This document shows, piece after piece, positions 31,410 to 56,527 of a stretch of DNA of 64,000 bases. Made by a program: the position numbers and the translations under genes. The stretch's first letter is position 1, and every line of letters begins with the position of its first letter. The DNA is from Pristiophorus japonicus (lineage: Eukaryota), in assembly GCF_044704955.1 (NCBI RefSeq), contig NC_091989.1, positions 104,842,001 through 104,906,000 on the forward strand, in the 5' to 3' direction. The notes beneath the pieces are model-generated. The model was not told the DNA's origin, searched no databases, and saw nothing but the letters and a program-made list of their open reading frames with translations.

Positions 31410-31464
31410 ATGTCGGTGAGAGCAACAGTTCAGTGCATGGCTCTTCTGGGCATCCTTTGGCCAG
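31410..31464 (+). CDS. Exon 1: signal peptide MSVRATVQCMALLGILWP
   Basis: ACCATG start, hydrophobic core, CAG|gtacct phase-1 donor. Confidence 0.8.
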
Positions 31465-34400
31465 GTACCTCGAGTTGTTATATGTTTCAGTTCTGAACGG
31501 CAAACTCTATTTTAGAAGATTCTACAACTGTTGTCTTTTGTAAAGTTACTGTGCTTTTCCAATTTGATTGCTGGTGTTTCTTAACTATTCTTGTATTTGA
31601 CGTCTCTTAATTATTTTTCTTTATCTGATGTGTGCAACTGTTATCGCCATTCTTGTTAATTTTCCGATAGCCGTTGAAGTAAATTCGAGCAAAGTGGACC
31701 AATTCCCTGAACACATGGAGGTTGCCAGGGGCACAAATGTTTCCATGTTCTGCACATTTTCCATATTTCAAGATGCCCCCGATGTTTATTGGTGGAGACG
31801 CGGCGACCAGACGTTTCTGCAGCCAGACAGCAGAAAGCAATTTAATGTTAAAAAGGGCAGAGGGTCATTTGATGTCCTCAATGCGAGTGTCGCAGACTCT
31901 GGAATGTATTACTGTACAGTAAAACATAATCAAACCGATGTTGGAGATGGAAGTGGCTCCCGGCTTACTGTGTTCGGTAAGTGCCATTGTGCCGGGGAGT
32001 GGGAGATTCTCAGCAGTGTGCGGTATATGTAAACCTTAATTGTGGGGGTCATTTGAACTTTTATCACTGGACGAAAACCTGGTGATAGCAAATTCGTTTT
32101 ACACTTCTCCCGATTTTCTTTTGCATTGACCCCGGTGTACTCCGGCCCGCCGATTCGCTATCGACCATTTTGCGCTACTGCCCAAGATCAATTTCACCCC
32201 TTCATTGTCCGCATGCAATTCCAAAGGGTTTTATATTCAATGAGTTATTTGGAAATGCAGTTACAGTTGTTATGGAGGTAAGATACTGAAAGAGTATACT
32301 TGTTTAAATCTTGGCTTAAAATGATTAACTTGGATTAGGTGGCCAGATTTCTTATCACCAAAATATCGGTGCCGAGTAGCGACATTGGAAACAATGTTAA
32401 CACCTCTTAGGTCAAGTCTTTTATATAATATTAAAGGTCATCTGCCCCACCCAATGTCTTGCTACAAACCTGTTTATTTCACACATCAGGTAACCTTTTG
32501 AAATTGCCAATCTAATATTTTATATTCTGAATTGCCCAAAATATGGAATTCCCTCTCCCAGAAGGCTGTGGATGGAGAAACAATTGAAGCTTTCAGTATG
32601 AAGATGGATAGATTTCATTAGGCACGGGTATCAAGGGATATAGAGTTAAGTGGGATAAACGAATTTGAGATACAGATCAACCATGATCTAATTGAATGGC
32701 CTGTTCCTATGTCCGCAGTTTAAGCTATGCACTTGCTTCCATTGAGAACTTATTTGAAACTGCCAAACTAATTTCACAAAGGAATCTTACAACCCATTGA
32801 GAGGGGCTATGTTGTTCTTACCCTCATTACTGGATTGGAACCCAAGTCCTAGAGCTGATGGGGCAATGTAGGAACCCAATGACTGCTTGAAACTCGGTCT
32901 TATGCCAATTGAACTTTTTTATACACTCACAACCGGGCAGGATATCACTGAACATTTCTCTAAACGCATGGGCTCCCGTATTTGTACTTGATGGTTTCCA
33001 TTTACACTCCCCCTCAACCCGAGACTGCAATTACGGCAGGAGATCAGAGAACACCGAAGCCGCCACCTCCACGGAAATTCTGCCGCATTACATATTAGAT
33101 ATAAACAGATCCATGGGGAAGGAATGGAGGAATTCTAATCTTAGGTTGGGCAGTCAACACGGTGCTGCTGGGAATAAAGGACAAAATAATTTTCCAAGTT
33201 AATAATGCCCTGATTTAATAAATTGCTATTGCTACAAAGTCGGACAAGTAAAAATGTAAGGAAAAATGTTAAGGAGATTGCTTATAATAAACCGGCAAAA
33301 CAATGCAAACCTAACGAGGGACTCTATTTCCAGCTAAAGAGTATCTGTAGCTTCAGCGGACAGAGGGTCACCTTAGTAACAGACGATTGTAGGACTGATA
33401 TAAGCAGAATCTTCTTCAGGCGAAATGTGTTCAACAGAGCGAATAGACTTGGGGAAGGGCAAAAACCCTGGAATTATATAAGACATGCATTCTGAGTTAG
33501 GATTTCCTATTGGGTTCCCCCCATCTGTATGGATGTTGTGATCTACACAGAGATACACAATTATCTATCTCACCCTTTCGTGACGTGATATCTATTCCAG
33601 CCCTCGGTTCGCGCTCTGGAGAAAGTACATTAAGGAAAGCTGCATGATCTGAAATCTCCCCCACACAAACTGAAATGCTGAATTAGCAACTGGAATGCGC
33701 GAATTCTAATCTATAGATTAGCAGCATCCAGTCTGCCGTCTGTGTAGACGACGGAGATATTTCAATATATTATGTACATCACCTCAATATTCACCGATAA
33801 TTTTAGATCATACATCGAAATATCTCTGTCTACACGGAATGTTGTGCAATATATGAAATATCCGAAAAAGGACCAATTTTGAAATTATCACACAAAATGT
33901 TTAACACCGTAAACATTATTAATGAATAATTGGGCCGTTCCCACTGTTCGTGTAGACTGCGCTCTCTCCGATATATTCGGACAGGAACCTCCCTCGGAGT
34001 CACAATCGCACGCCAGGATCTGATACTTCCATTGAGAACAGTGATGCGAGCCTCCCTGTATGTTACCGATCCTGGGACATTGACCCTGTTTGCGTACCGT
34101 TTCCAATACCCATCATTTCGCTCTGCAGTGCAATCTATAAAATAAATGCAAACAAGTTTAAAAAACGATAGCGCGGATAACTATTGTTAACTATACGGTA
34201 ACCGCATAAGGAGGGTAGGTAAATGAGAATGTCTTCCTTTAAATTGAAATAAAATGATCAATGTAATTTTTTTTCTCTGTTAAAGTTCCCCCAACCCCCC
34301 TAAAAATCGTTGCTGTCGAAGGGATTTCAGCGACTTCTCTGAAACTCGAGTGTAAAACGGCTGGCTTTTACCCGGAGCATTTAGAAATCTCCTGGCGAAG

Positions 34401-37400
34401 AGATGGTGTCGCAAATCTGACCGGAATAGCAACAGGAATACGAAACAGGAGTGCGGAGGAACTGTATGAGGTTTCCAGCTGGTTGGAAGTAGCACAGCCT
34501 GCCCACAGCGGAGTTGTTTATACATGTCTGGTATCTCATGTCTCTCTTCGGGTGCCCGCCAATGTCAGCTACACTGTACAGCAAGGTAAGATTAGAACAT
34601 TTACAGCGGGGAACTGCTCCAACCTGTATTTACTAATTAACAAGTAGCTGGGCAGCTGTTCAAACCCAATGATATTGGGTAACTGTGAATTGTATTTACT
34701 GTTAATGTCACATCAATGGGAATGAAATAAAAATATTCAAAACATGGAGTGAAGGAGGGAGACTGTCTCCATGGAAGATATTTGATAGGGTGTTCAAAAT
34801 CATGAGGAGTTAGAGAGTAGATAGAGCGAATCTGTTCCCACTGGCAGAAGGTTTGACAACCAGAGGACAATGATTTAAAATGATTGGCAGAAGAACCAAA
34901 GATGACATAAGCAAAAACAGTTTTACACAATGAGTGGTTAGGATCTGGAATACACTGCCTGAAAGGGTGGTGGAGGTAAACTCAATTGAGGCTTTCAAAA
35001 AGGATCTGGCTAAGTACCTGAAGAAAAAAAATGCAGGACCCGCAGGACCATGGGAAAAGGGCGAGGGAGTGAGACTAGCTTGTTTTTTCTTCTTTCGCAT
35101 GGTAGTAGCAAGGCAAATCAGATATCAAAGTCAGATATCCAGGCCAAAGCTCCCGGTGTATCTGCAAATTTCCTTTGAGGTCAGTGCTCAATGATGTACC
35201 CCAGGGTCTGATTAGGAGCTCCATAGTTGCTGATGGGGATGCTTTAATCTTCCACCTATGGAGAAGGTGGCAGCATCTACATGACAGGTTCTGAGGTGGT
35301 AATTGCTTGTTACTGTTAGCAAGGAAGGTTTGATCCTTCAGGTCGTACTGTGAGGTCCTTATAAGGACCATGTCACAGTTCTTCCAAGCACTTTGCCATC
35401 GGTCATCAAGGCTAAGGGGAGATTGCTGAAGGGCTTCAGCTATGGCCCAAAATGGCCTTCCAGATTTGAAATTGTTTGGTGGTATTTTCTACAAATCAGC
35501 CTGGATCAGTATGTCTTTGCTGGTGTACCAGTTATAGTCTCTGGAGACTGCGTAATCGCACTGCAGGTGTGGTGATGTGATGTTTGCAAGCACTGGCAGC
35601 CAAGTTGTTGGTGTGGATGGAAACATAGTGGGACAAGCTGAAGTGCTCCTGCAGAGAGCTGGCATGGACTCAATGGGCTGAATGGCCTCCTTCTGTGCTG
35701 TAACCATTCTATATTTCTATGGAGAAATCCGCAACAGGAGATTGATGTGCGAACTGCTCAAAAGCAGAAAGATTATTCCTCCTCAAATGAAATGAAATAA
35801 TGCAACAAATTGATCCATTCTACAAGATTCGCTTGTACATCCTGTGTATTTAAATGTAATATATGGAACTGTCGATGGGTAGATGCTCTCTGGAGTGTAT
35901 AAGGTGAGAGGTGATCTCATTGAAACATATAACCTTCTTAGAGAACTTGTTGAGGAAGATGCTGAGAGGTTGTTTCCCCTGGCTGCAGAGCCTGAAACTA
36001 GGGGGCACAGTTTCAGGATAACAGGTCGGCCGAGATGAAAAGGAATATTTTCATTCAGAGGTTTGTGAACCTTTGAAATTCTCTGCCCCAAAGGGATGTG
36101 GATGCTGAGTAATTGAGTATAATCAAGGCTGTGATCGATAGATTTGCGAACTTTAAGGTAATAACGCGATCTAGTGATTGGGTGGGCAAGTGGAGTTGAG
36201 GTCGAAAATCAGCCACGATCTTATTGAAGGCTCGAGGGTTCGTATGGCCTACTACTGCCCTAATTTGTATGTACTTATTATGTTCATCTGTTCTCATCGC
36301 ATCGTGCCTTCAGCTGTCTAGACTGTAAACTTTGGAATTCCCGCTCTAAACCTCTTCTCTTCTGTACCTCGCTCTCCTTCTTTAAGACGTTCCAATCCCC
36401 TACTTCATCCTGTCCTAATTGTGACTCGGTCTCAAATTTTCGATAATGCTCCTGTGAATTGACTTGGGACGTTTTAATATGTTAACGGCGCTATGTAAAT
36501 GCTAGTCGTTCTTGTTGCCTATCAAAAGTTGCAATAGGTTCCCTCCAGTAAGGCTGGTCAGGGATGGCAGCACTGGAGAATGGACGACTTGATCAATTTT
36601 TGTAGTCGGTGCCCATCAATCAGATGTTGCACGGCTAGGTAAAACATGAAACTCTCTTTACTCTTAATTAGCAACCCTCGTGTGCAGAGAGAAACTTCCT
36701 GGGCCTTTATGTAATGAGATTTGTTTTCTCGAAAAATTGCATCACTGACTTGCAGTTAACTTCGTTTGGTACACGTTATAATCCTTGCACATCTGCAGCC
36801 CATAGAAATAAAAGAGGTCGAGCCCCACTGACAGTAAGTGGGCGCCATCATCCCGAGAGGCACCTTTGGAACTCGCCCTCCTGGCCGGACCCATGATTCG
36901 CTGTGTATATCTCTCTCTATATTCTACCGTTTCTTATTTCAATTACCTGTTGATCCTGTAGGTCCTGGTGCCATTGTTCCGGTGATTTTTGGATCTGCAG
37001 GGGGCGCATTGGCAATTTTACTCTTAATTATAATTTTGACGAGACTCAGATTAAAGTCATCAGACGGTAAGAACCTTTCTTATTTAGCCGAAACCGTTTG
37101 TTTTCTGCGGTCCAGTTGTAGTGTTACAAAATCGAAAGGGCGGAAGAAAAGGGATTGATTGTAGAGGAATAAAGTGCACTTTACTGTCTATATCTTTAAA
37201 GAATGAAGCTAATACCACAAGAGCGTTATGTGGTTGGCGCTAGTTGAATATGACAACGTAAACCGAATCTTGAAATGCAAATATTCGAACAATTCACTCA
37301 AATCATACACTTCAATTTCGCAACACTCGGAATCCTCAATGTTCTGCAATATTTTAGCATCAGTCCGGGTCCAGATCTTGAAGAGTAAACACTTTGCGGT

Positions 37401-40400
37401 AGATGTTGACTTTTTGCGATAGTGTAAAACGGATGACAGCGAATTGGCAGCCTGCTTTACATCTCTCCCGATTTTTATTCCCATTGAAGTCACAGAGAGA
37501 GATGTAAATGAACTGCCGACTCACTATCACCCGTTGTACACTATCGCACAAAGTGTGGGGGTACTCCATCGGGTGCAGCGTCACTGCGGGGTCTGAGACG
37601 GTACTACACTGTAAGGACTGGTACTTCTAAACACCTTCAATCAGATCTTTACCGTCAGATCTCCTTATTTAACAAAGTAAAGTCAACCAACATCAACTCA
37701 TGTTGGCTTTGCCGGTACACAGATTAAGTTATTCAAGATGTTTTTTTTTCCTTTAGGCATTAAGAGAAATTCTGAGGAAGCGGGTCAGATTGAAGAACCG
37801 GTAGGACGACAATGTTCTTTATGTTCCTAAAAGAGGTGGCTGGGGGAAGAGCAACACAATATACATTCAGCCGAGATTACTTATATTTCATAGAATCATA
37901 AACTCTTACAACACAGAAGGAGGCCATCGTGCCTGTTCCGGCTCTTTGAAAGAGCTATCCAATTAGCACCCCCCCCCCCCCCCCCCACACCCCCTATTTA
38001 CCCATAGCCCTGCAATTGTTTTCGTCTCAATTCCCATTTTCTAAATTTTTACTGAATCTACTCCGTCATCCTTACAGTCAGTGCGTTCCAGATCAGAACA
38101 GCTGGCTGCATAAAAATACTCCTCATCTTCTCTCTGGTTCTTTTGCCAATTATCTTAAATCTGTGTCATTTGGATACCAACCAACCCACCAGTGGAAACA
38201 GTTTCTCCTTATTTACTGTATCAAAACCCATCAGAATTTTGAACACCTCTACTACATTGTCCCTTAACCATCTCTGCTCCAAGGAGAACAATCGCAGCTG
38301 TAAGATCCTCCAATAGGCTGGGCTGGCTGAGGAATAGGAAGGTGGCCCACACCCCACCATCAGGAGAGTAGAGAGATAGAGATAGTGAAAACCTTCAGAG
38401 GAGTAGAGAGATAGGGAAAATTGGGGATGGGAAGGGGGAAATGAGCAATGTATTCATAGGATATTTATTAGCTGTGCTCTAAATCATCCTGACTTTAAAC
38501 GTAGGTAAATAATTTGTGTGCTATGGGTTTCATAACACGCAATAATCCACACCTTATGGGTGAGATATTGGCTAAAGTCATTGTGAGTGCGGACAGAATG
38601 TATTCGTGCCCATACCTATCGGTTACTGTGTGCATATTTACACTTTCAGACTCAGTTCCAATTGATGGTAGCTGGCAGCTGTAAGGGATTCACCACTATC
38701 AGTATTCGATGTCTTATTCTTACAGGTTGTTGCCTACACTACTCTAAACTTGAGAGACAACAGAGGACCTCCCAAACGGAGACAGGAGAAAGAGCAGACC
38801 ATCTATTCCCAGGTAGAGCAGAGGGTCTGGCGCCAATAATATCCAAATCATTTCCATACAAAATCAACAGAGGCAATGTCAACAATCTGTATAGAAACGT
38901 GGTGGTAATTTTGACTTTGTGCAACAGTGTAATAATCATGGGCGATTTTAACTTTCATATTAATTGGACAAAGCAAATTGGCCAGGGCAGCCTTGAGGAA
39001 GATTTCATAGAGTGTTTCCTTGAACAGTACATTGCGGAACCAACCAGGGAGCAGGCTATTAATAGATCTGGTGCTGTGTAATAAGACAGGATTCATAAAT
39101 GATCTTGTAGTAAAGGATCCTCTGGGAATGAGTGACCATAACATGGTTGAATTTCAAATTCAGTTGGAGGGTGAGAAAGTTGGTTCTCAAACTAGGGTCC
39201 TTAGCTTAAATAAAGGGATAACCATACGTGGCTAACTGAAGAAATAAGGGAAGGGAAGGAAAATAATTGAAAACAAGGGCATACAATGTGGCCAAGATTC
39301 GTGGGAGGCCAGAGGATTGGGAAACTTTTAAAAGCCAGCAAAGAGCAACTAAAAAATGATAAAGAGAGGGATGATAGATTATGAAAGTAAACTATATGAA
39401 ACATAAAAACAGATAATAAGAGTTTCTACGTGTACATAAAAAAGAAAAGAGTGGCTAAAGTAAATGTTGGCCCCCTAGAGAATGAGACTGGGGAATTAAG
39501 AATCTTGGTAGTCTGCCGTATGCAACAAAGACGTTGATGTGCTAATCATCAATGGCATGTGGCTTCAAGTGGCTGTATAGGCCAATTCTGGATGCACATA
39601 GTCTCTTGCACGTCGGACAAGGGAAGTTCGATGTGTCTGATGCTGACAGTACCGCCACCTGATGCCGCCTATCTCTAGTGTCCCGCAGGCGTTGACATCG
39701 GCTTTCTTCGAAGGTCTGGCAGGCAGTCCTCGTGAGGGTTCACCGCTGGATTTTATTAGCTGCTGTATTCTCGAGGTCCTTTAGTCGGATGCCAGAGTAC
39801 TGGAGGTTAGCCTTGATGCAATCTTTGTAGCGCTTGCGGGGGCGCCCCTGGTGTCTTTGACCTTCACAGAGCTCGCTGTGAAGAAGCTGATGAGGGATCC
39901 TTAACTCATCCATGTGGATGACATGTCCAGCCCACCAGAACTGGGCTCGCATGATCAGCACCTCAATGCTAGTTGATTGTGCTCTCTCCAGAATCTCAAA
40001 GTTTGACACCCAGTCTTGCCAGCGAATGTGGAGTATAGATCTGAGACTGCGCATATGGAAAGCTTCCAACTTTTTGATGTGATGCCTGTAGGGTGCCCAG
40101 GTCTCACATCCATAAAGGAGAGATGAGAGAACGACTGCTCTATACACCAACAGTTTAGTTGACAGTCGGATGTTGTGGTGACAACACTTTAGTGCGCAAG
40201 CAACCAAGTGCCTGTCTGGCTTTACAGATCCTTGCATCAATTCCTTGTCCAAGGACCCATCACTTGATATGGTGCTGCCAAGGTACTTGAAGCTGTCCAC
40301 TGACTTTAGTTGTATACTGCCGATGAAGACTGTGGGAGCAGGTGCTGTGGTGCCAGGGGCAGGCTGATAGAGAACCTCGGTTTTACTAAGGCTGATGGTT

Positions 40401-43400
40401 AGGCCAAACAATTCTGTTGTCGCAGCAAATTTGCTGAGTATGAATTGTAGGTCACTCTCCTTGTGTGCCATAAGGGCGCACTCGTCAGCAAAGAGTGCCT
40501 CTAAGATGAGTCGTTTCTGTACTTTGGTCTTTGCAGCAAGGCGGCGGAGATCGAACAGTGAACCATCTAATCGATATTTCAGGTAGACCCCAAACTCCAA
40601 GTCTTTTATGGCATAGTTCAAGATGCAGGTAAAGAATAGGTTGAACAGAACTGGAGCGAGTACACAACCTTGTTTCACTCCATTTGAGAGGGCAAATGGG
40701 GCTGTGGTTGTGCCGTCTGAGAGCACTTCACATGTCATGTTGTCATGAAACAGCGCAATGATGTAGACAAACTTCCTTGGGCACCCAAGTTTCATCAAGA
40801 TTGACCACAGCGCTGCTCTGTTGACAGTATCAAAGGCCTTGGTGAGGTCAATAAATACAGCGTACAGGTCCACGTTCTGCTCAATGCACTTCTCCTGCAC
40901 TTGTCTGAGTGCAAAGATCATGTCCGCTGCGCTCCGACCAGGTCGAAAGCCACATTGTGTTTCTGGAAGATTTACTTCTGAGACACTAGCTATGAGTCGG
41001 TTCAATACTATGCGGGCGATGATCTTCCCAGCAATGGACAGAAGCGATATTCCCCTGTAGTTGCCACAATCTGCTTTGTTGTCCTTGTTCTTGTAGAAGG
41101 AAACTATCATAGTGTTACAGAAGTCCTGTGGCATGTCTTCATCTTCCCAGATGCTAGTTATTATGTCATGAAAGGCCTCGAGAGTTGCTGGGCTTACTGC
41201 CTTGTAGATTTCGGCAGGGATTCCATCCTTTCCTGGAGCCTTTCCAGTACTCATCTGGTTGATGGGTTTCTTTACTTCGTCCATGCTGGGTGGAAGATCA
41301 AGATCTTCTTTGATAGGTTGCTGGTGTATGGAGTCAAGTGCTTCTTCTTTCACTGTTGAAGGTCGATTAAGAAGATTACTGAAGTGTTCTCTCCACCTCT
41401 CATGTATGCCAGTCCTGTCTTTGATCAAAATGCTGCCATCTGCTGAAAGGAGTGGGGTAGTGCTGGGTTTTGATGGTCCATAGACTGACTTGATGGCGCT
41501 GAAGAACATCTTGCTATTGTGAGTTTCAGCATAATGTTCCACTTCCTCTGCTTTCGGCTGCCACCATTTATCTTGCATCTGGCGAAGGTCTCTTTGTGCT
41601 TTGCTCTGCATATGTCTGTAACGGTCCCTCTTGGTAATTGAGGAAGCATCATTTTGCCATTCTAGGTATGCTTTTTTCTTTTCATCCAGCGTCTTACAGA
41701 TCTCAACATTGTTTTCATTGAACCAGTCTTGGTGTACCTTCTTTTTAAGTCCAAGAGTTGTCTTTGCTGAATCTGTCACCATCTGTTTGAGCTTTGTCCA
41801 CTTCTGTGTGATGTTGCCGATGAGCGGTCCGTGAGACATCAGCCTGTTATCGAGGTCATCCTGGAACTGCTCACGGTAGCACTGATGTTTCAGCCTAGCT
41901 GTGTTAAAGGCACTTCTGCTCGGTTTTCGACGCTTGCGCTGAAGTGGAGCAATGTACAGCTGGAGAGTGGGTCTGACTAGACGGTGATCTGTCCAGCATT
42001 CTGCTCCCCGCATGGCTCGTGTGATTTTTTTACATCCTTCATATCTCGCCTTCTTACAATGACATGGTCTATCATGTGCCATTGCTTAAACCTGGGGTGC
42101 ATCCAAGTTGTTTTGTACTTGTCGGCCTGCCTGAATAGAGTATTTGTGATAGTCAAGTCGTTCTCCGCGCAATACTCAAGAGGAGGAGGCCATTACTATT
42201 TAATTTTCCTGTGCCGTGCTGTCCAATGACTCCCTTCCAGGGCTTGCTGTCTTTTCCAACTCATGCATTGAAATCACCCAGGATGATCAACTTGTCTCCA
42301 GCAGGTGTGAACCTGACCAGTCTGTCTAGATCTTCATAGAACCTCTCTTTCATCTCATCGGGGCTTGGAAGGATGGGTGCATAAGCACTTATAATGGTGA
42401 TGTGGCGTTTGGCATTCAGGGTGAAACGCAGTTTCATAAGTCTTTCGTTAATCCCTTCAGGCAGATTCGGAAACTGTTGCATAACAGAAGTCTTCACTGC
42501 TATGCCAACTCCGTGGATCCTATTCTCTTTCTCTGCCTTGCCTTTCCAATAGAAGGTGTAGCCGCTACCTAGTTCACTCATGCAGCCCTCCTCTGCAAGT
42601 CTTGTCTCACTCAGAGCTGCTATATCGATGTTATAATGCTGCAGCTCTCTTGCAATAAAGTTAGTCCTTCTTTCTGGTCTTGTAGTGTCAGCTCCGTCTA
42701 AGAGTGTGCGAATGTTCTATTGTCCGAGAAGAAGTTTTCTTGTGTTATGAAGTTTTCAACTGTTGCTATATTTTCGACCGCAGAATGGGTTGAACTGCCA
42801 GCCGCGGTATACTGGCCAGTTAATGGAAGGGCAGGCAATGTTTGGGCCACCTTTTCTAGGCCCCTCCCTTATAAAGGGTGAGCAGTGCTGTCCTAAAGAG
42901 GGCTGCTCAGTCGCCTGGGGTGCTGCCGGGTTCCTCTGCTGCCCTGGATAGAGAGTCAAATTACCACTTTCCCACAGGCCGCCTACATGCAGGTTTGAGG
43001 CTACGACTCCCAGTGATCACCTCCACCTGTCGCTTTGTCCCTCCCCCATCGCCGCAGGACTTGGTATGTTGGATGATGGTTAGCACGAACCTGTACATAG
43101 ATGCTTTTAAAGTGGGAAGGCCGGTACACAGGGGAATTAAGAATACAGAACAGGCAAATGGCAGAGACGTTGAACAAATATGTTGTATTGGTCTTCATGG
43201 TAGAAGACACTAAAACATCCCAATAGTGGATAATCAAGGGGCTATAAGGAGGTAGGAACTTAATACAATCAGTATCACTAATGAAGTTGTACTCGGTAAA
43301 ATAAAGGCGAAGAAGTTTCCTGGATCTGATGGCTTACATCCTAGGTCTTAAAAGAGGTGGCTGCAGAGATAGTGGATGCATTGGTTCTAATCTACCAAAA

Positions 43401-45531
43401 TTCCCTGGATTCTGGAGGCAGTCCCAGTGGATTGGAAAACCGCAAATGTAATGCACCTATTTAAAAAAGAAGGCAGACAAAAACCAGGAAACTATAGACC
43501 AGTTAGCTTAACATCCTGTTGTTGAGAAAATGCTAGAGTTCATTTTTAAGGAAGTGGGACATTTAGAAAAGCATAATTCAATCAAGCAGAGCCAGAATGG
43601 TTTTATGAAAGGGAAATCATGTTTGACAAATTTGCTGGAGTTCTTTGAGGATGTAACGAGTAGAGTTAATAAGGAGGAACCAGTGGATGTGGTGTATTTG
43701 GATTTCCAGAAGGCATTCGATAAGGTGCCACATAAAAGGTTACTGCACAAAATAAAAGTTCATATGGTAGGGGGGTAATATATTAGCATGGATAGAGGAT
43801 TGGCTAACTAACAGAAAACAGGGAGTCAGGATAAATGGGTCATTTTCTGGTTGGTAAACAGTGACTACTGGGGTGCCACACGGATCAGTACTAGGTCCTC
43901 AAATATTTACAATCTATAATGATGACTTGGATGAAGGGTCCGAGTGTAATGTAGCCAAGTTTGCTGATACAAACATGGGCGGGAAAGCAAATTGTGAGAG
44001 GACACAAAAAATCTACAGAGGGATAAAGGCAGGCTAAGTGAGTGGGCAAAAATCTGGCAAATGGAGTATAGTGTGGGAAAATGTGAGGTTAGCAGTAAAA
44101 TAGAAAAGCAAATTTCAATTTAAATGGAGAAAAATTGCAAAGTGTTGCAGTACAGAGGGACTTTGGGGTCCTTGTGCATGAAACACGAAAAGTTAGTATG
44201 CAGGTACAGCAAGGAAACAGGAAGGCAAATGGAATGTTGGCCTTTATTGCAAGGGGGATAGAGTATAAATGCTACAACTGCACAGGGTACTGGAAACGCC
44301 ACACCTCAAGTACTGTGTACAGTTTTGGTCTCCGTATTTACGGAAAGATATACTTGCATTGGAGGCTGTACAGAGAAGGTTCACTAGGTTGATTCCAGAG
44401 ATGAGGGGGTGATTTATGAAGATAGGATGAGTAGGTTGGGCCTATACACATTGGAGTTCAGAAGAATGAGAGGTGACTTCAATGGAAATAATATCGGGAG
44501 ATGTAAAACGGGCCGCGGATTCCCTGTCATCAGACTTACACTATCGCACACCAACATTATCCCAGTTTGTTTCTCGAGTCTGGCTGATAATGATTGCTTT
44601 GAACTACAAATTGCAGAATAAGAAACTCACCTGATCAGATTGGCAAATATCTCTGTTATAGACGAAGCAAGGAACCGATGACAGACTGACCTACGCCGCT
44701 CTCGTAACCAGCACCACGAAAAACGCGAAAGGCAGACAGGAGGAGAGCACGGTGTATGCCCAGGTACAGCTCAGGTCATTCACTGAAACACAATACTGAG
44801 CCGCAGGAAATAGAAAGGTCCCAGGTTTAATCTAGCAAGTGTGTTGTGTCGGCTGATCGCAGACAGGTTTCATTATAATTGACCTTCGTGTCCCAGGGAT
44901 CGGCTGAAAAGTACAAATGCGCGGCAGGTTCCACCTTGGAGCCTCCCCCGTGGGATCAGCAGGTCACCCTGGCTGTCGGCTCTCGCCTTAAAACGGTGCT
45001 TTGCGATATGAGTATTCCAAATATTTAACAGGCGAGTATGACATTGCTTTGTCTGCTATTTTAATTGAAATATTAACCTGCTCATGTAAATGATTTACAA
45101 CATTAGACGAACTCATTTTATATGAGCATTAAACCGGAATATTAACGAGATTTTTTCGGGCCCAAGAATGGACACTGAAGGGGAGGGCAGCTGCTCCTGG
45201 AATTGGAGCCCAACAGGAATCAGTGTTTGCCGAGCAGGGAGAAACCGGAGACAATACAATCAATCAGTACAAAGTCTGAATAAACCGCTTCCAATCTGAA
45301 GTTAGGAATTGATGAGAGGAAATTTCCCCGCAGCCTTTTTTAAACCGCAGTGTGCAATGGACTAACGGGTGCTCCTAAATGTCACTTTCACAGACTAAAC
45401 AAAGAGGCGGAGATAAGCTGACTTACACCGCCCTGCAGTTTGCTGATTCTAAGAAAACATCAACATCTAAACACCAAGGCCAGGGCGCGGTGTCTGCAGA
45501 AGTGAACCTGAGAAACAAAGAGAGGAGCTGA
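31410..45531 (+). CDS. SIRP-alpha-like / VJ-C1 Ig-superfamily inhibitory receptor, 378 aa; join(31410-31464,31671-31976,34286-34585,36962-37066,37757-37800,38726-38812,44662-44763,45394-45531)
   Basis: All introns are GT-AG with consistent phases (1,1,1,1,0,0,0); 1137 nt open frame; leader, V, C1, TM and three ITIM exons in canonical order. Confidence 0.88.
31671..31976 (+). CDS. Exon 2: V-set Ig domain with germline-joined J-like G strand
   Basis: VSMFC...VYWW...DSGMYYC...GDGSGSRLTV; tttccgatag acceptor, G|gtaagt donor; 306 nt. Confidence 0.95.
34286..34585 (+). CDS. Exon 3: C1-set Ig domain (absent from the ORF track)
   Basis: LECKTAGFYPEHLEISW...YEVSSWL...YTCLVSHVSL; ttttctctgttaaag acceptor, G|gtaaga donor; 300 nt. 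Confidence 0.95.
36962..37066 (+). CDS. Exon 4: transmembrane segment
   Basis: GPGAIVPVIFGSAGGALAILLLIIILTRLRLKSSD; basic stop-transfer residues; G|gtaaga donor. Confidence 0.92.
37397..37560. mobile_element. Palindromic MITE of about 160 bp; relatives at about 9766-9872, 32045-32200, 44476-44555, 58760-58912 and 59270-59455
   Basis: Arms ttgcgatagtgtaaaacggatgacagcgaattggcag / ctgccgactcactatcacccgttgtacactatcgca are reverse complements. Confidence 0.7.
37757..37800 (+). CDS. Exon 5: juxtamembrane cytoplasmic exon GIKRNSEEAGQIEEP
   Basis: Strong tttttttttcctttag acceptor; phase 1 to phase 0; gtagga donor. Confidence 0.75.
38726..38812 (+). CDS. Exon 6: ITIM exon A (VVAYTTLNLRDNRGPPKRRQEKEQTIYSQ)
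   Basis: cttattcttacag acceptor; ITIM VAYTTL; CAG|gtagag donor. Confidence 0.85.
38913..44478 (+). mobile_element. CR1 LINE in intron 6, split by an RTE insertion (pieces 38913-39503 and 43131-44478)
   Basis: APE motif IIMGDFN before the RTE and RT motifs (VYLDFQKAFDKVPH) after it. Confidence 0.88.
39504..43130 (-). mobile_element. Full-length RTE-clade (BovB-like) LINE with a 14-bp TSD
   Basis: APE (IAALSETR, ISAYAP, ILGDFNA) and RT (QCGFRPGRS, GVKQGCVLAP, LFADE) domains; TSD ggggaattaagaat at 39490-39503 and 43131-43144; a few stops and frameshifts. Confidence 0.95.
44662..44763 (+). CDS. Exon 7: ITIM exon B (TKQGTDDRLTYAALVTSTTKNAKGRQEESTVYAQ)
   Basis: ctctgttatag acceptor; ITIM LTYAAL; CAG|gtacag donor. 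Confidence 0.85.
45394..45531 (+). CDS. Exon 8: terminal ITIM exon C (TKQRGGDKLTYTALQFADSKKTSTSKHQGQGAVSAEVNLRNKERS*)
   Basis: ACTAAC branch point at 45361-45366, cactttcacag acceptor; ITIM LTYTAL; TGA at 45529-45531. Confidence 0.87.
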   Translation, partial: TKQRGGDKLTYTALQFADSKKTSTSKHQGQGAVSAEVNLRNKERS

Positions 45532-45980
45532 GAATCTGAACACAGTCCGAAGATGTGGATTATTTATGGTGTAGGCCCAGGGTATTCGATTGTACTCCGT
45601 AACATATGTGTCTGTCACGGTTTTCATTTATTACGGCCAGGCTGTGGAGTAACGAGCTGGAACGTCGCATATATCGTATGTGTATGTTGGGGATGGGGAG
45701 GCGGGTGAAGTGGTAATTTTCACCTTCAGTGAACTGGCGGAATTGGTCGCCGGCACATTATAGAACCAGCCCGCTATCGGGCGCTTTCCAGGGCGAGGCT
45801 AGGGTCCGTAACGGCTGCAAGCTGAAAATCTGCTCCGGACCATGTGTTCTGGATTTCAAGTGTGCGCGATATTATCAACCGGTTGTCATCGAAACTTTGT
45901 AACGTCAGCTTGTGACGGCTCTTAAACTATAGCTTGCATGATTGAGATCACAGGGGTTCATGAGGAGTCCCTTGTACTCT

Positions 45981-45986
45981 AATAAA
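45981..45986 (+). terminator. Polyadenylation signal of the receptor gene
   Basis: AATAAA 450 nt after the stop, followed by T/GT-rich sequence. Confidence 0.7.
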
Positions 45987-47279
45987 GTGCCATTCGATTC
46001 AATTTGTTTTAATGAATATTTATTTACGTTGTTTAACAAATTATACTGAGGTGAATGATCAGCCATGATCTTATTGAATGGTGGTGCAGGCTCGAAGGGC
46101 CGAATGGCCTACTCCTGTACCAATTTTCTATGTTTCTATAACATTTGTCTTTTAAAATGCTTTTGGCGACAGCAATTATTTGCTGTGAAATCTGCCTGTA
46201 TTGTGCTCTTTGGGTCACAGGGTAGAGGGAGGAGGTCGGCGAAAGTACCCATTCCACACCCCTTGAAAAATGCACCGAACTCTTTCTTCAAAGATTCTAG
46301 GCTCATATTTTGAAGCAGCCGAGTTTCAATCCAGGGACAGACGAGCCTAACCCCCCGCTCTCCTCCCGGATAAAAGTTAAATCCTACTCTTAAAAGGGAC
46401 AATATCACTCAAATACCAGAAGTTGGTCCATCCAAATAACGTTAAACAAAATTAAAAGCTAAATAGCATCAAAACTAAAATGAAATATGGTGCTTAGCGG
46501 CCTTTTCCTCCCAACCTTCACATGAGAAGAACCTAGTTGGAGAGCGCAGTACAGACAGTCACTATTCAAATATAAAAGCAACGTGTTTCTTCCCACTCCA
46601 CAGCGCAGCCAACATGGACTCTTGCTGTGGTCCGGGGCTGTGTCCCTTTCATTGTGGTGTTGCAAAATACACCAGCTAGCCGAGCCCAATGCGGTTTCGG
46701 TGTAGGGTACAGTTAGTGAAGGGGCTCTATAGCAGAACAGGACAAAACTAAAGGGTACAGCCGTTCTCCCACCATTGTAAATCAGTTTCAGGTACACAAA
46801 GCGATCAGAAAGACAAAAGACATGTACATAGATTTTATATCCATATGAACAGAGTACAGGGATTTATTAAACGGCTTTTCAAAAAATAATTGTACTTCTG
46901 CTCAAGATTACATTTGGAATTGTTTTATAAATAGGATATAAAGTCTGACCAACTGCTAGCAGCTTGAGTGTGAATACACCCGCACCATTCGTGCGATGGA
47001 GTACTGCAGACACTAAGCTATCGATCATTTTGGTACCAATGCACAATACGTTTGGGGCGGGGAGAGAGAGGAACACTAGCTCTGAAATTCTACAAGGCCA
47101 CTACCATCAATCCCCTGCTCAAACGTTAGCGGACCAGGGGCGACCTCAAAGAAACAGTATAAGCAGACCTTTGTCATTTATCTCGGGTTGACAAAGTTAG
47201 AGCGGGAGGCCAGTGATAGCCTTGCGGAATGCCAGGGACACCGTATTTAATATAACGTACTTTGTACGACTTACAATTA

Positions 47280-49326: not shown

Positions 49327-50584
49327 CAGGTGCAGCGTCCAGAATCCGGAACCCTTGGGACCAAGTCCGTTCCGGATTTTGCGCTTTGCCAGAATTTGAA
49401 ACGTCTTTCTGATGTCACGAATCCGGAAACATCCGAGCCCAGGTTCGGGTGTTTCCGGATTTTGGAACATCAGAAAGAGGGGGAGGGGGGATGGCCATCG
49501 ATGAGCTGTTCGGGTCGCCAGGTGGGGCCCCACAACCGTGGAAGTGTTCGGGCGGGGCCCCGCCGCTCTGGAGTTGTTCAGGCCGGGCCCCACCGCTGTG
49601 GAGTTGATCAGGCGGGACTTCGCTGCCATGGAGTTGTTCGCACGGGCCCCGCGAAGAGGAGATATTCTTCGCATGGGCCCCGCCAAAGAGGAGATGTTCG
49701 CGCGGGGCCCTGCCACCGAAATGTTCATGCGGGGCCTCGCCGCCGTGGAGGTGTTCGGGTGGGGCCCCGCTGAAGAGGAGCTGCTCAGGTGGGGCCCTGT
49801 ACGGAGGAGGTGTTCTTGTAGGGCCCCGTCGCGGAGGAGGTGTTCGTGCGGACTGGCGAGTTGAGGCCTGAGGTTGGGCGGTGGCGGCGATGGGCGGTGA
49901 GGCAAGGCCTGAGGTCGTGCGAAGAGGTCTGAGATCAGGCGGTGGCGAGGGGTGGTGTGGCGAGGTCCGAGGTTGGGCAGCAGCGATGCTGAGGCGAGGT
50001 CCGAGGTTGGGCAGCAGCGGTGCTGAGGCGAGGCCGGAGGTTGGGCAGCGGCAGCGGTGAGGCGAGGCCCGAGGTCGGGCAGCGGAGACGGATGGTGTGG
50101 CGAGGCCCGAGGTCGGTCAGCGGCAGCGGTGAAGCAAGGCCCGGGCAGCAGAGATGGACGTTGTGGCGAGGCCCGAGGTCGGGCAGCGGCGAGAGGTGGT
50201 AGCGAGGCCCGAGGTCGGGCAGCAGTCGGCGGTGAGGCGAGGCTCGAGGTCGGGCGGCGAAGTGAGGCCTGAGGTTGGGCAGCGGCGAGAGGTGGTGTGG
50301 CGAGGCCCGAAGTCGGGCAGCGAGGCGAGCCCCAAGGTCGGGCAGCGGCGAGGGATGGTGTGGCGAGGCCCGAGGTCGGGCAGCAGCGAAGGGTGGTGTG
50401 GCGAGGCCCGAGGTCGGGCAGCGACGATGAGGCCCGAAATCGGGCAGCGGCGGCCTCAAGGTCGGCAGGTTCCTGATTCCAGAACATTTTACGGATTGCG
50501 GATAACCGTGCCACCAATCGGTTTGGAGTCCGAATTCCGGCACATTCCGGATTCCGGACCTCTGGATTTTGGACGCTGCACCTG
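49327..50584. mobile_element. Non-autonomous Tc1/mariner (Tigger/pogo-like) element filled with GC-rich tandem repeats
   Basis: TA|CAGGTGCAGCGTCCAGAATCC...GGATTTTGGACGCTGCACCTG|TA gives TIRs with a TA TSD. Confidence 0.88.
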
Positions 50585-54500: not shown

Positions 54501-56161
54501 TGTCATGCTCCTCCTGTGTTATATGGGCACTCAGGGATGCTTCCAGTGTCCCTGATGACTACATGTGCACGAAGTGTATCCTGCTGCAGCTCCTGACAGA
54601 CCGCATTGTGGCACTGGAGCTGCAGGTGGATTCACTCTGGAGCATCCGTGATGCTGAGGATGCCGTGAATAGCATGTTTAGTGAGTTGGTCATGCTGCTG
54701 GTAAAGGTTACACAGACAGATATGGAATGGGTGACCAACAGGAAGAGCAGTGGAAGGAAGGTATTGCAGAGGTCTCCTGCAGTCATCCCCCTTCAAAACC
54801 GATACACCATTTTGGGTACTGTTGGGGGTGATGACTTATCAGGGGAGGGCAACAGCAGCCAAGTCCATGGCACCATGGGTGGCTCTGCTGCACAGGAGGG
54901 CAGGAAAAAGAGTGGGAGAGCTATAGTGGTAGGGGATTCTATTGTAAGGGGAATAGATAGATGTTTCTGTGGCCGCAATCGAGACTGCAGGATGGTATGT
55001 TGCCTCTCTGGTGCAAGGGTCAAGGTTGTCTCGGAGCAGCTGCAGGACATTTTGGAGGGGGAGGATGAATAGCTAGTTGTTGTGGTGCATATAGGTACCA
55101 ACGATATAGGTAAAAAAATGGGATGCGGTCCTACAAGCTGAATTTAGGGAGCTAGGAGTTAAATTGAAAAGTATGAACTCAAAGGTAGTAATCTCAGCAT
55201 TGCTACCAGTGCCATGTGCTAGTCAGAATAGGAATCGCAGGATAGCTCAGATGAATACGTGGCTTGAGGAGTGGTGCAGAAGGGAGGGGTTCAAATTCCT
55301 GGGACATCTGAACCAGTTGTAGGGGCGGTGGGACCAGTACAAACCAGATGGTCTGCACCTGGGCAGGACCGGAACCAATATCCTAGGGGGAGTGTTTGTT
55401 AGTGCTAGTGGGGAGGGGTTAAACTAATATGGCAGGGGGATGGGAACCTATGCTGGGAGACAGCGTGAGGTAGAATGGGGCAGAAGCAAAAGATAGAAAG
55501 AAGAAAAGTAAAAGAGGAGGGCAGAGAAACCGAAGGCAAAAATCAAAAAGGGCCACATTACAGCAAAATTCTAAAGGGGCAAATTGTGTTAAAAAGACAA
55601 GCTAAAGGCTCTGTGCCTCAATGCAAGGAGTATTTGTAATAAGGTGGATGAATTAACTGCACAGGCGGCAATATGATATAATTGGCATCACAGAGACATG
55701 GCTCCAGGGTGACCAAGGCTGGGAATTCAACATCCAGGGATATTCAACATTCGGGAAGGATAGACAGAAAGGAAAAGGAAGTGGGGTAGCGTTGCCAGTT
55801 AAAGAGGAAATTAATGCAATAGTAAGGAAGGACATTAACTTGGATGATGTGGAATCTGTATGGGTGGAGCTGCAGAATACCAAAGGGCAGAAAACGCTAG
55901 TGGGAGTTGTGTAATGACCACCAAACAGTAGTAGTGAGGTCGGGGACAGCATCAATCAAGAAATTAGGTATGCGTGCAATAAACATACAGCAGTTATCAT
56001 GGGCAACTTTAATATACATATAGATTGGGCTAACCAAACTGGTAGCAATACGGTGGAGGAGGATGTCCTGGAGTATATTAGGGATGGTTTTCTAGACCAA
56101 TATATCGAGGAACCAACTAGAGGGCTGGCCATCCTAGACTGGGTGATGTGTAATGAGAAAG
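51571..56161. mobile_element. Near full-length CR1 with inverted 5' half: 3' part on - (51571-53919), 5' UTR/ORF1/APE on + (53920-56161)
   Basis: ORF1 with zinc finger and esterase-like domain (VSCSSC...CTKC, IVVGDSIVR) from 54479; APE to 56161 joins in frame to the minus-strand part starting at 53919. Confidence 0.88.
53925..54290 (+). repeat. 67-bp tandem repeat (about 5.5 units) at the CR1 5' end, each unit with TATAAAA
   Basis: TATA at 53977, 54044, 54111, 54178 and 54245. Confidence 0.92.
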
Positions 56162-56527
56162 GCAGCAATAGTTTCCGCCTGAGGAAAGAGATCAACTGTG
56201 AGGTAAGAGCTATTGTAGTACATTTCATGCTGTCAACCAGTCAGCTGGACCAATGGCTACTCAACTCCCACCTCAGGTTGTCAGATGTGGTTCCTGATCT
56301 GCATGAATTCTGTGGTCATGCAGGGAAATTTGAAAGGTAGGCTAAAAAAGGCATCTGACAACAAGCTGATCATTTTTATTAGCTCGCCCGCCTCTGCTGT
56401 TTCCGTCGATGTCACACCAGCAGACACGCCCAAGGGAAAGGTTCCGACATGCTCCAACTTATTTTAAGTTACCCAGCTGACCCACCTCCGATCATGCCCA
56501 CACAGAACTCAGAAAATTCTGGCCTAT

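What the first reader, a model, noticed from the sequence alone, without database searches (positions are those of the whole stretch)
38798..44799. Splice donors sit inside the ITSMs: a possible splice-controlled ITIM/ITSM switch
Seen: exons A and B both end Tyr-x-Gln at CAG|GTA. Splicing gives TIYSQT and TVYAQT, which break the TxYxxV/I consensus. Reading through the donor gives TIYSQV(EQRVWRQ*, stop ending 38839) and TVYAQV(QLRSFTETQY*, stop 44797-44799), which are perfect ITSMs. Both donors are non-consensus beyond GTA. Intron 7 contains ATTAAA (45128) and AATAAA (45279) that could end the read-through mRNA. Established: ITSMs bind SHP-2 and SAP-family adaptors. Inference: isoforms with 1 ITIM+ITSM (PD-1-like), 2 ITIM+ITSM, or 3 ITIM and no ITSM could be selected by donor usage or intronic polyadenylation. 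The Gln-Val codons probably supplied the cryptic donor that made the exon duplication viable.
Basis: partly seen in the sequence, partly recalled or inferred. Interest (0 to 1): 0.78.

Follow-up and report, generated by a model that had tools for sequence, protein, structure and literature searches.

The report
Shark receptor tail: introns cut ITSMs
The last three exons of a shark inhibitory immune-receptor gene are copies of one signalling module, and the splice site of each inner copy falls inside a tyrosine motif; this layout is inherited across the family, and no evidence yet shows it works as a regulated switch.

Summary

The stretch holds exons 6-8 of an intact 8-exon gene: leader, V, C1, TM, then four tail exons. 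It belongs to a large shark, ray and chimaera family that NCBI auto-names [quoted passage not shown] (SIRP-like).

Exons A, B and the last exon are copies of one module. In last exons of relatives the module ends Y-x-x-V/I/L, then 3-17 residues and a stop. In inner copies the intron starts exactly after Y+2.

- **Val is automatic.** Read-through gives Val because a phase-0 GT donor is a Val codon.
- **The layout is family-wide.** In 21 distinct tail contexts from relatives, Y+2 is Q, E or K in 20 and Y+3 is Thr in 13.
- **The other features are not unusual.** Two poly(A) hexamers in 631 nt occur in 146 of 1268 equal-sized windows. A stop within 12 codons occurs in 42% of random frames.
- **Relatives vary differently.** Their annotated isoforms vary the tail by exon skipping or by different last exons.

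The evolutionary inference is supported; the regulated ITIM/ITSM switch is untested and I give it about 0.12. Earlier notes of this scan describe the same family elsewhere in this genome.

The parts
31410..31464 (+). Exon 1: start codon and leader peptide; donor CAG|GTACCT
   Evidence: tblastn of Heterodontus and Scyliorhinus relatives; border
31671..31976 (+). Exon 2: V-set Ig domain with a J-like G-x-G-S-x-L-T-V end; donor TCG|GTAAGT
   Evidence: Pfam V-set E 2.5e-10; 72.5% identity to P0151 residues 19-119; borders
34286..34585 (+). Exon 3: C1-set Ig domain; donor AAG|GTAAGA
   Evidence: Pfam C1-set E 8.6e-10; phmmer best single-domain hit P0003 at 73% identity, E 4.4e-39; borders
36962..37066 (+). 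Exon 4: transmembrane segment; donor ACG|GTAAGA
   Evidence: Hydrophobic run read; borders; the matching 35-residue exon is skipped in Heterodontus isoform X2
37757..37800 (+). Exon 5: short membrane-proximal tail exon, ends in phase 0; donor CCG|GTAGGA
   Evidence: tblastn to P0166 and P0167; borders
38726..38812 (+).
   Evidence: 66.7% identity to P0151 residues 275-307, E 6e-10
38813..38839 (+). Read-through frame after donor A: Val plus 7 residues and TAA. A second in-frame GT lies at 38825 (AGG|GTCTGG).
44662..44763 (+).
   Evidence: tblastn to P0151 and P0167 modules, E 0.004-0.018
44764..44799 (+). Read-through frame after donor B: Val plus 10 residues and TGA
45128..45133 (+). ATTAAA hexamer in the last intron; no evidence that it is used
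   Evidence: chance estimate
45279..45284 (+). AATAAA hexamer in the last intron; no evidence that it is used
   Evidence: chance estimate
45394..45531 (+). Exon 8, coding part: T-K-Q-R start, ITIM LTYTAL, then A-V-S-A-E-V where relatives have A-V-Y-A-E-V (terminal Tyr replaced by Ser), 8 more residues, TGA
   Evidence: (64.6% identity to P0151 residues 334-380, E 6e-10)
45981..45986 (+). AATAAA 450 nt after the stop codon: likely normal poly(A) signal of the gene (inferred)

Best explanation
The finding covers the last three coding exons of an intact 8-exon gene for a shark SIRP-like receptor: leader, one V domain, one C1 domain, a membrane span and an inhibitory tail.

Exons 6, 7 and 8 are old tandem copies of one tail module, made of an ITIM, about 15 residues, then a second tyrosine motif. 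The module was first a last exon, ending Y-x-(E/Q)-(V/I/L), a short tail and a stop. In the copies that became inner exons, the AG of the Gln/Glu codon and the GT of the Val codon are used as the splice donor.

The spliced protein therefore carries T-x-Y-x-Q followed by the first residue of the next module, which is Thr here. The "perfect ITSM plus early stop" seen on read-through comes from two things: this descent, and the fact that a phase-0 GT donor reads as Val.

The main product is most likely the fully spliced protein, with three ITIMs and two T-x-Y-x-Q-T sites. Some retention of the 631-nt last intron is plausible and would escape nonsense-mediated decay. That would give a 2-ITIM form ending in TVYAQV plus 10 residues, but nothing shown here says it is made or regulated.

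- **Shown:** the exon anatomy, the homology of the modules, and the family-wide border at Y+2.
- **Inferred:** the direction of the change (last exon to inner exon) and the main product.
For: **Anatomy**
- All seven introns start with GT and end with AG.
- The exon lengths add up to 1137 nt, which is 379 codons including the stop.
- Pfam finds V-set and C1-set domains.

**Family**
- The C1 exon finds 661 proteins at E<=1e-3.
- The close ones are cartilaginous-fish V-C1-TM proteins that NCBI names PTPNS1-like.

**Module homology**
- The three exons align with each other.
- Exon A matches exon B by blastn at E 1e-4.
- tblastn matches A, B and the last exon to the matching modules of Heterodontus XP_067906043.

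**Border at Y+2**
- In the 15-unit alignment, all 7 inner units taken from relatives end at Y+2. All 6 last-exon units continue with V, I or L plus 3-17 residues. The window's two read-through tails line up with those last-exon tails.
- Heterodontus X1 and X3 (P0192, P0193) differ by exactly one 37-residue module ending TVYAQ. P0186 and P0167 carry two different last exons that start right after VYAQ.

**Family counts**
- I counted 21 distinct contexts of a Tyr lying between two ITIM-like Tyr.
- Y+2 is Q 16, E 3, K 1, G 1.
- Y+3 is T 13, L 3, A 2, V 1, I 1, N 1.
- Y-2 is T 14.

**Chance estimates**
- The poly(A) hexamers and the early stops are within chance.
Against: - Past the first 12 nt after the donors I found no homology between the introns and the 3' end of the last exon. 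The read-through tails therefore cannot be proved to be relics of an old C-terminus. The similarity after Val is weak: L-R shared between B and the last exon, R only for A.
- The direction of change (last exon to inner exon) is an argument from parsimony, not a rooted test.
Borders in relatives rest on one isoform pair, on the different last exons, and on homology to the window.
- Thr at Y-2 is kept in 14 of 21 inner motifs. Two relatives carry V at Y+3 in the annotated protein: Pristis P0111, and Heterodontus P0127/P0197, where His replaces the Tyr. A use of the full ITSM in some forms is therefore not excluded.
- No RNA data of any kind were available.
Confidence: 0.72

Rival explanations
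1. Donor choice or intronic polyadenylation is regulated, so the cell selects among three forms: a 1-ITIM+ITSM form (stop at 38839), a 2-ITIM+ITSM form (stop at 44799), and a 3-ITIM form without ITSM. This would switch which SH2 partners the receptor uses.
For: - Both donors lack intron-side consensus: 6 of 9 matches and no +5 G.
- The acceptor of exon B has the weakest pyrimidine tract of the gene, at 0.53.
- The read-through frames close after 8 and 11 residues.
- The last intron is short (630 nt by the corrected border, 44764-45393) and holds two poly(A) hexamers.
- Retention of a last intron would not trigger nonsense-mediated decay (established rule, recalled).
- The fully spliced protein has lost the terminal Tyr that relatives keep, so only a read-through form would carry any Y-x-x-V site.
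- Thr at Y-2 is conserved in inner modules.
- Three Callorhinchus UniRef models (P0022, P0155, P0156) read TVYTQV and then run on into what looks like intron.
Against: - No transcript evidence: no RNA run was listed.
- Val at Y+3 is automatic for any phase-0 donor.
- The hexamers and the early stops are within chance.
- A form that only retains intron 6 would put its stop far upstream of the last junction, so it would need an intronic poly(A) site. The nearest hexamer (39209) is unremarkable.
- The spliced junction motif is conserved across the family.
- NCBI isoforms of relatives differ by skipping the TM exon or a tail module, or by the last exon. None of the NCBI isoforms I read ends in a read-through tail.
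- The three Callorhinchus models may be incomplete automatic models. I could not check what supports them.
Confidence: 0.12
2. Module number is varied by skipping whole phase-0 tail exons, or by choosing among duplicated last exons, and not by read-through. Exons 6 and 7 are symmetric cassettes (87 and 102 nt) that can be left out in frame.
For: - Both exons are phase 0 at both ends, with lengths divisible by 3.
- Heterodontus P0192 and P0193 differ by one whole module. P0186 and P0167 use different last exons. P0151 and P0164 differ by the TM exon.
- Mouse Ly108 changes its ITSM number by exon skipping and mutually exclusive exons (PMC10003074, passages read).
Against: - These are automatic NCBI models of another species.
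- P0186 and P0167 may join exons of two neighbouring gene copies.
- There are no RNA data for this gene.
- This reading is compatible with the best explanation rather than opposed to it.
Confidence: 0.12
3. The exons are not real or the gene is dead, and the motifs are chance open frames among transposon debris.
For: - The gene lies among LINE fragments.
- I found no annotated protein of this species for it in the databases searched.
- The terminal Tyr is lost.
Against: - Eight exons lie in order on one strand, with GT-AG borders and a continuous frame.
- Identity to the Heterodontus protein is 47-73% exon by exon.
- No exon contains a stop.
Confidence: 0.04

Closest known systems
Cartilaginous-fish predicted proteins named by NCBI [quoted passage not shown]. 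The nearest is Heterodontus francisci XP_067906043.1 (P0151).
   Same: - Same order of parts: leader, V, C1, TM, short exon, module A, module B, last module.
- Identity is 72.5% (V), 66% (C1), 67% (A) and 65% (last).
- Same junction motifs, T-V-Y-x-Q then T-K/E-Q.
   Different: - The window's last module has Ser where Heterodontus has the terminal Tyr (A-V-Y-A-E-V).
- The window's module B keeps a canonical ITIM (LTYAAL), whereas Heterodontus has F-P-Y-T-T-V there.
- Heterodontus has 8 more residues after exon 5.
- The family is known only from automatic annotation. I found no paper on it.
Mammalian SIRP-alpha (PTPNS1/SHPS-1)
   Same: An N-terminal V domain with a J-like end followed by C1-type Ig. 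The tail is built of repeated pairs of an ITIM and a second tyrosine motif (recalled; the automatic name points the same way).
   Different: - There is only one C1 exon here.
- The V exon's best solved-structure matches are contactins, Robo, DCC and TCR chains. No SIRP entry was among the 60 shown of 63 matches.
- Orthology and CD47 binding are untested.
ITAM genes in which the YxxL motif is split by a phase-0 intron (CEACAM3-type tails and others)
   Same: A tyrosine signalling motif is cut by a phase-0 intron as a family-wide trait. Figure-legend passages in PMC2832619 and PMC5112662 call this "characteristic" for ITAM and ITAM-like motifs.
   Different: - Here the cut motif is ITSM-like, not an ITAM.
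- The residue after the cut is usually Thr, so the spliced motif leaves the consensus.
- The cut can be traced to duplication of a last exon.
- The exon-border alignments of those papers are in additional files that I could not open.
Tail isoforms of Ly108/SLAMF6, CEACAM1 long/short, and horse CEACAM42/50
   Same: - Splicing decides how many ITIM/ITSM motifs the protein carries.
- Horse CEACAM42 uses another donor that extends an exon by 37 nt into a stop and so removes the ITIM/ITSM (PMC5856374, passages).
- Ly108-H1 loses one ITSM by exon skipping (PMC10003074).
   Different: - In those cases the transcripts were cloned. Here no transcript is known.
- In those cases whole motifs are kept or lost. 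Here read-through would complete a motif by adding its last residue.

Membership tests
ITSM (TxYxx[V/I]; definition as quoted in PMC5856374 and PMC2832619) | Thr at Y-2 and Tyr | tested here: met
   T-I-Y at the end of exon A and T-V-Y at the end of exon B
ITSM (TxYxx[V/I]) | Val or Ile at Y+3 in the protein made from the spliced mRNA | tested here: not met
   The next exons start with ACG and ACT (Thr), giving TIYSQT and TVYAQT
ITSM (TxYxx[V/I]) | Val at Y+3 in a read-through product that is really made | not testable with these tools
   The frame reads Val, but no RNA run was listed and read laying could not be used
ITSM (TxYxx[V/I]) | Binding of SAP-family adaptors or SHP-2 to the phosphorylated motif | not testable with these tools
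   Needs phosphopeptide binding assays
ITIM ([S/I/V/L]xYxx[I/V/L]) | Sequence consensus in the cytoplasmic tail | tested here: met
   VAYTTL (exon A), LTYAAL (exon B), LTYTAL (last exon)
Cartilaginous-fish SIRP-like V-C1 receptor family (automatic NCBI name) | Leader, V-set, one C1-set, TM and a modular ITIM tail, with sequence similarity to members | tested here: met
   Pfam; 661 phmmer hits, the closest at 73%; exon-by-exon tblastn; names
SIRP-alpha proper | V domain followed by two C1 domains | tested here: not met
   Only one C1 exon lies between the V and TM exons
SIRP-alpha proper | V domain closest to SIRP V domains; CD47 binding | tested here: inconclusive
   No SIRP entry among the 60 shown of 63 PDB sequence matches to the V exon. 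A sequence search can miss distant relatives. Binding was not testable.
Composite terminal exon / intronic polyadenylation | Poly(A) signal downstream of the read-through stop, beyond chance | tested here: not met
   The hexamers at 45128 and 45279 are present, but at least 2 hexamers occur in 146 of 1268 windows of 631 nt
Composite terminal exon / intronic polyadenylation | Transcripts that end in the intron | not testable with these tools
Tyrosine motif split by a phase-0 intron (known for ITAMs) | Phase-0 intron inside the Yxx[hydrophobic] motif, shared by family members | tested here: met
   In the window, both introns start after Y+2 in phase 0. In a relative, the module border is defined by isoforms P0192 and P0193. 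Unit alignment.

The most novel reading that the evidence does not exclude
In this whole family of shark, ray and chimaera receptors, the inner tail modules may carry latent ITSMs. Thr at Y-2 and the Tyr are kept by selection, while the last residue is set by RNA processing.

- Normal splicing gives Thr at Y+3.
- Intron retention, a shifted donor or a changed first codon of the next exon gives Val or Ile. Examples are the in-frame GT at 38825 and the V-G insertion in the Heterodontus pair P0127/P0197.

One gene could then move between phosphatase-type and SAP-type signalling. The sawshark gene has lost its terminal Tyr, so it would depend on this route for any Y-x-x-V site.
Probability: 0.12. 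Interest if true: 0.6.

Novelty: new variant of a known kind. Interest (0 to 1): 0.35.

Why it matters
If the reading holds, it gives a clear worked example of how inhibitory receptor tails grow. A last exon is duplicated, and the Glu/Gln-Val codons of its own tyrosine motif serve as the splice donor that lets the upstream copy become an inner exon. This explains why a conserved T-V-Y-A-Q-T site, one residue off the ITSM consensus, recurs across cartilaginous fishes.

It also raises a question that can be tested directly: is that site a working docking site, or a masked ITSM?

The practical value is modest. The gene is one member of a large family that is already predicted automatically. Control of ITIM/ITSM content by splicing is already known from Ly108, CEACAM1 and relatives.

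Tried and rejected
- **RNA evidence.** The look-up of sequencing runs (kind rna) on 44600-46000 listed no run, so read laying was never called.
- **Genomic DNA of relatives.** I could not compare the introns after the donors between species.
- **Relic 3' end.** I asked whether intron 7 is a relic of the last exon's 3' UTR, which would make AATAAA 45279 an old poly(A) signal. blastn with short words found nothing beyond the exons, so I dropped the idea.
- **Relic C-termini.** I asked whether the read-through tails can be shown to be old C-termini. Identity after the donor is about 9 of 15 (A versus B) and 7 of 15 (B versus last) by my reading. That is too short for a test, so I keep it only as suggestive.
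- **Tail-focused protein search.** The search with P0151 residues 262-380 returned only 5 Heterodontus proteins among 38 candidates. No protein of the window's own species appeared.
- **First junction count.** The count used a pattern that required Q, E or K at Y+2. It caught 6 false contexts among 30, by my reading. I replaced it with the count, which sets no condition at Y+2.
- **SIRP-alpha membership.** It is not supported by domain number or by the PDB sequence search.
- **Pfam on repeat-derived frames.** It found nothing for three of the four frames tested.
- **Papers.** Searches found no paper on this shark family and none on an ITSM cut by an intron. That covers only the held library. 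I asked for no supplements. The exon-border alignments of the CEACAM papers are in additional files that I did not see.
Full report
**1. The observation**

Reading the window and translating by script confirms every detail.

- Exon A is 38726-38812. It encodes an ITIM (VAYTTL) and ends T-I-Y-S-Q at CAG|GTAGAG. The open frame continues V-E-Q-R-V-W-R-Q to a TAA ending at 38839.
- Exon B is 44662-44763. It encodes LTYAAL and ends T-V-Y-A-Q at CAG|GTACAG. The frame continues V-Q-L-R-S-F-T-E-T-Q-Y to a TGA at 44797-44799.
- Exon B begins with a Thr codon. So does the last exon, which starts at 45394 (one base earlier than I first assumed). Splicing therefore gives TIYSQT and TVYAQT.
- ATTAAA is at 45128 and AATAAA at 45279.

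**2. What the locus is**

Open frames, Pfam (V-set 2.5e-10, C1-set 8.6e-10) and tblastn with relatives define one gene on the + strand, and no second copy in the window.

| Exon | Coordinates | Content |
|---|---|---|
| 1 | 31410-31464 | leader |
| 2 | 31671-31976 | V domain |
| 3 | 34286-34585 | C1 domain |
| 4 | 36962-37066 | membrane span |
| 5 | 37757-37800 | short tail exon |
| 6 (A) | 38726-38812 | tail module |
| 7 (B) | 44662-44763 | tail module |
| 8 | 45394-45531 | last module and stop |

An AATAAA follows at 45981. All seven introns are GT-AG. The exon lengths add up to 1137 nt, a whole number of codons.

**3. The family**

A phmmer search with the C1 exon against 1.84 billion representatives gave 661 hits at E<=1e-3. 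The close single-domain hits are V-C1-TM proteins of sharks, rays and the elephant shark. NCBI names most of them [quoted passage not shown], and a few carry other automatic names.

The nearest is Heterodontus francisci XP_067906043.1 (P0151). It has the same run of tail modules. No protein of the window's own species turned up. Earlier notes of this scan call the genome Japanese sawshark and describe the same family at other places in it. I did not test the species name.

**4. The three tail exons are copies of one module**

- MAFFT aligns A, B and the last exon with their acceptors.
- blastn links A and B over 51 nt at 74.5%, E 1e-4, running 12 nt past both donors.
- tblastn matches each exon to its Heterodontus counterpart, and also matches exon B to the Heterodontus last module.

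The copies are therefore older than the split of the two sharks.

**5. Where the intron sits**

I cut tail modules from the window and from five relatives and aligned them.

- All 7 inner modules taken from relatives end at Y+2.
- All 6 last-exon modules from relatives continue at that column with V, I or L, then 3-17 residues and the end of the protein. Examples are A-V-Y-A-E-V, T-L-Y-A-D-V and T-E-Y-A-E-I.
- The window's last exon aligns there with A-V-S-A-E-V, so the terminal Tyr has become Ser.
- The window's two read-through tails fall in the same columns as the last-exon tails.

The borders I used in relatives come from homology to the window. One is confirmed independently: Heterodontus isoforms P0192 and P0193 differ by exactly 37 residues that end TVYAQ, and the next residue is T of T-K-Q-G. 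P0186 and P0167 are identical up to VYAQ-TKQR and then carry two different last modules.

**6. Family-wide counts**

I looked at the tails of the fetched proteins of at most 560 residues that carry the C1 motif used in the script. A tyrosine lying between two ITIM-like tyrosines occurs in 21 distinct sequence contexts.

| Position | Residues (of 21) |
|---|---|
| Y+2 | Q 16, E 3, K 1, G 1 |
| Y+3 | T 13, L 3, A 2, V 1, I 1, N 1 |
| Y-2 | T 14, V 4, I 2, A 1 |

- Q, E and K are the residues whose codons can end in AG, as a donor prefers. I could not see the codons of relatives.
- An earlier count required Q/E/K at Y+2 and caught 6 false contexts among 30, so I do not rely on it.
- In Pristis P0111 the next module starts with Val, which gives a full T-P-Y-A-Q-V in the spliced protein.
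- Heterodontus P0127/P0197 read T-A-H-A-Q-V-G before T-K-Q-R, as if the donor had moved two codons.

**7.

- *Val on read-through.* It is not a coincidence to be explained by function. A phase-0 donor GTN is a Val codon, and here the GT descends from the Val codon of the motif.
- *The donors.* Both A and B match the consensus at 6 of 9 positions and lack +5 G. The TM and exon 5 donors also score 6 of 9, and exon 1's donor (CAG|GTACCT) also lacks +5 G. Exon B has the acceptor tract with the fewest pyrimidines, at 0.53.
- *The hexamers.* A[AT]TAAA occurs 67 times on the + strand of the window, or 1.06 per kb. At least two in 631 nt are seen in 146 of 1268 windows.
- *The early stops.* 3789 of 8995 random 12-codon frames hold a stop.
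- *An old 3' UTR.* Intron 7 shows no homology to the 3' UTR of the last exon. The hexamers cannot be called relics of an old poly(A) site.

**8. Transcripts**

The central claim of a regulated choice between spliced and read-through forms could not be tested.

Indirect evidence points to other ways of varying the tail in relatives:
- skipping of one whole module;
- different last exons;
- skipping of the TM exon.

All of these are automatic models.

The only models that read through a T-V-Y-x-Q donor are three Callorhinchus UniRef entries (P0022, P0155, P0156). Their tail runs on for about 50 residues. I could not check what supports them.

**9. Mechanism, and how sure I am**

Most likely (0.72), the module border inside the motif is an inherited by-product of last-exon duplication. 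The gene's main product is then the spliced protein with three ITIMs and two T-x-Y-x-Q-T sites.

The spliced junction motif recurs from chimaera to sharks, which suggests it works as it is. From memory, not from a call: the SAP SH2 domain can bind with two of its three contact regions, so loss of Val at Y+3 need not abolish binding.

Retention of the short last intron is plausible at some level. Because it is the last intron, the product should escape nonsense-mediated decay (established rule, recalled). A form that stops after exon A would need an intronic poly(A) site.

I give the regulated switch 0.12.

**10. Comparison with what is known**

- Figure-legend passages in PMC2832619 and PMC5112662 call the splitting of a tyrosine motif by a phase-0 intron "characteristic" for the YxxL of ITAM and ITAM-like motifs. 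I found no such statement for an ITSM.
- Control of ITIM/ITSM content by splicing is documented for several receptors:
  - mouse Ly108 (PMC10003074, passages);
  - CEACAM1 long and short forms;
  - horse CEACAM42 and CEACAM50, where another donor extends an exon into a stop or shifts the frame (PMC5856374, passages).
- I found no paper on the shark family itself.

**11. Verdict**

I judge this a new variant of a known kind: a tyrosine motif cut by a phase-0 intron, in a tail built of modular exons. Interest is moderate.

Noticed in passing
window 45484-45501 (last exon): The terminal tyrosine motif of the family (A-V-Y-A-E-V in four Heterodontus proteins) reads A-V-S-A-E-V here. The fully spliced protein therefore has no Y-x-x-V/I site at its end.
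   Followed up: partly
window 38825: A second in-frame GT (AGG|GTCTGG) lies 12 nt after donor A. If used, it would add V-E-Q-R and keep the frame into exon B, giving a full T-I-Y-S-Q-V inside a long tail. It matches the consensus poorly. Heterodontus P0127/P0197 show a comparable two-residue insertion (V-G).
   Followed up: no
window 37801-37830: Heterodontus proteins carry about 8 extra residues (V-R-Q-A-P-S-E-Q) after exon 5. In the window the frame past the exon 5 donor reads V-G-R-Q and then hits a stop, so the two sharks use different donors there.
   Followed up: no
proteins P0151 and P0164 (Heterodontus), P0187 and P0021 (Narcine): Annotated isoforms lack exactly the transmembrane exon (35 and 36 residues). 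This predicts soluble forms of these receptors.
   Followed up: partly
proteins P0186, P0167, P0166 (Heterodontus, consecutive accessions): One annotated gene carries two different V exons and two different last exons. It may be two tandem copies merged by the annotation pipeline, or a real choice between duplicated last exons.
   Followed up: partly
window 49519-50424: A G+C-rich tandem array with periods of about 30-38 and 63-68 nt. The best row has period 68, 7 copies and score 306. It underlies a long repeat-derived open frame on the minus strand.
   Followed up: partly
window 16695-18798: Five N runs lie inside a TG/CA-rich, microsatellite-like stretch. I left them untouched.
   Followed up: no
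window 23245-24415; also 38587-39232, 43512-44618 and 55657-56749: Many LINE-type retrotransposon fragments fill the introns and flanks, including both ends of the 5.8-kb intron between exons A and B. The 23245-23976 frame hits Pfam RVT_1 at 1e-22. The 38587-39078 frame got no Pfam hit, and the other two stretches I read only by eye.
   Followed up: partly
window 62608-64000: Open frames that look like a retroelement gag/pol, by eye. Pfam gave no hit for the two frames tested. I only observed this and built nothing from it.
   Followed up: partly
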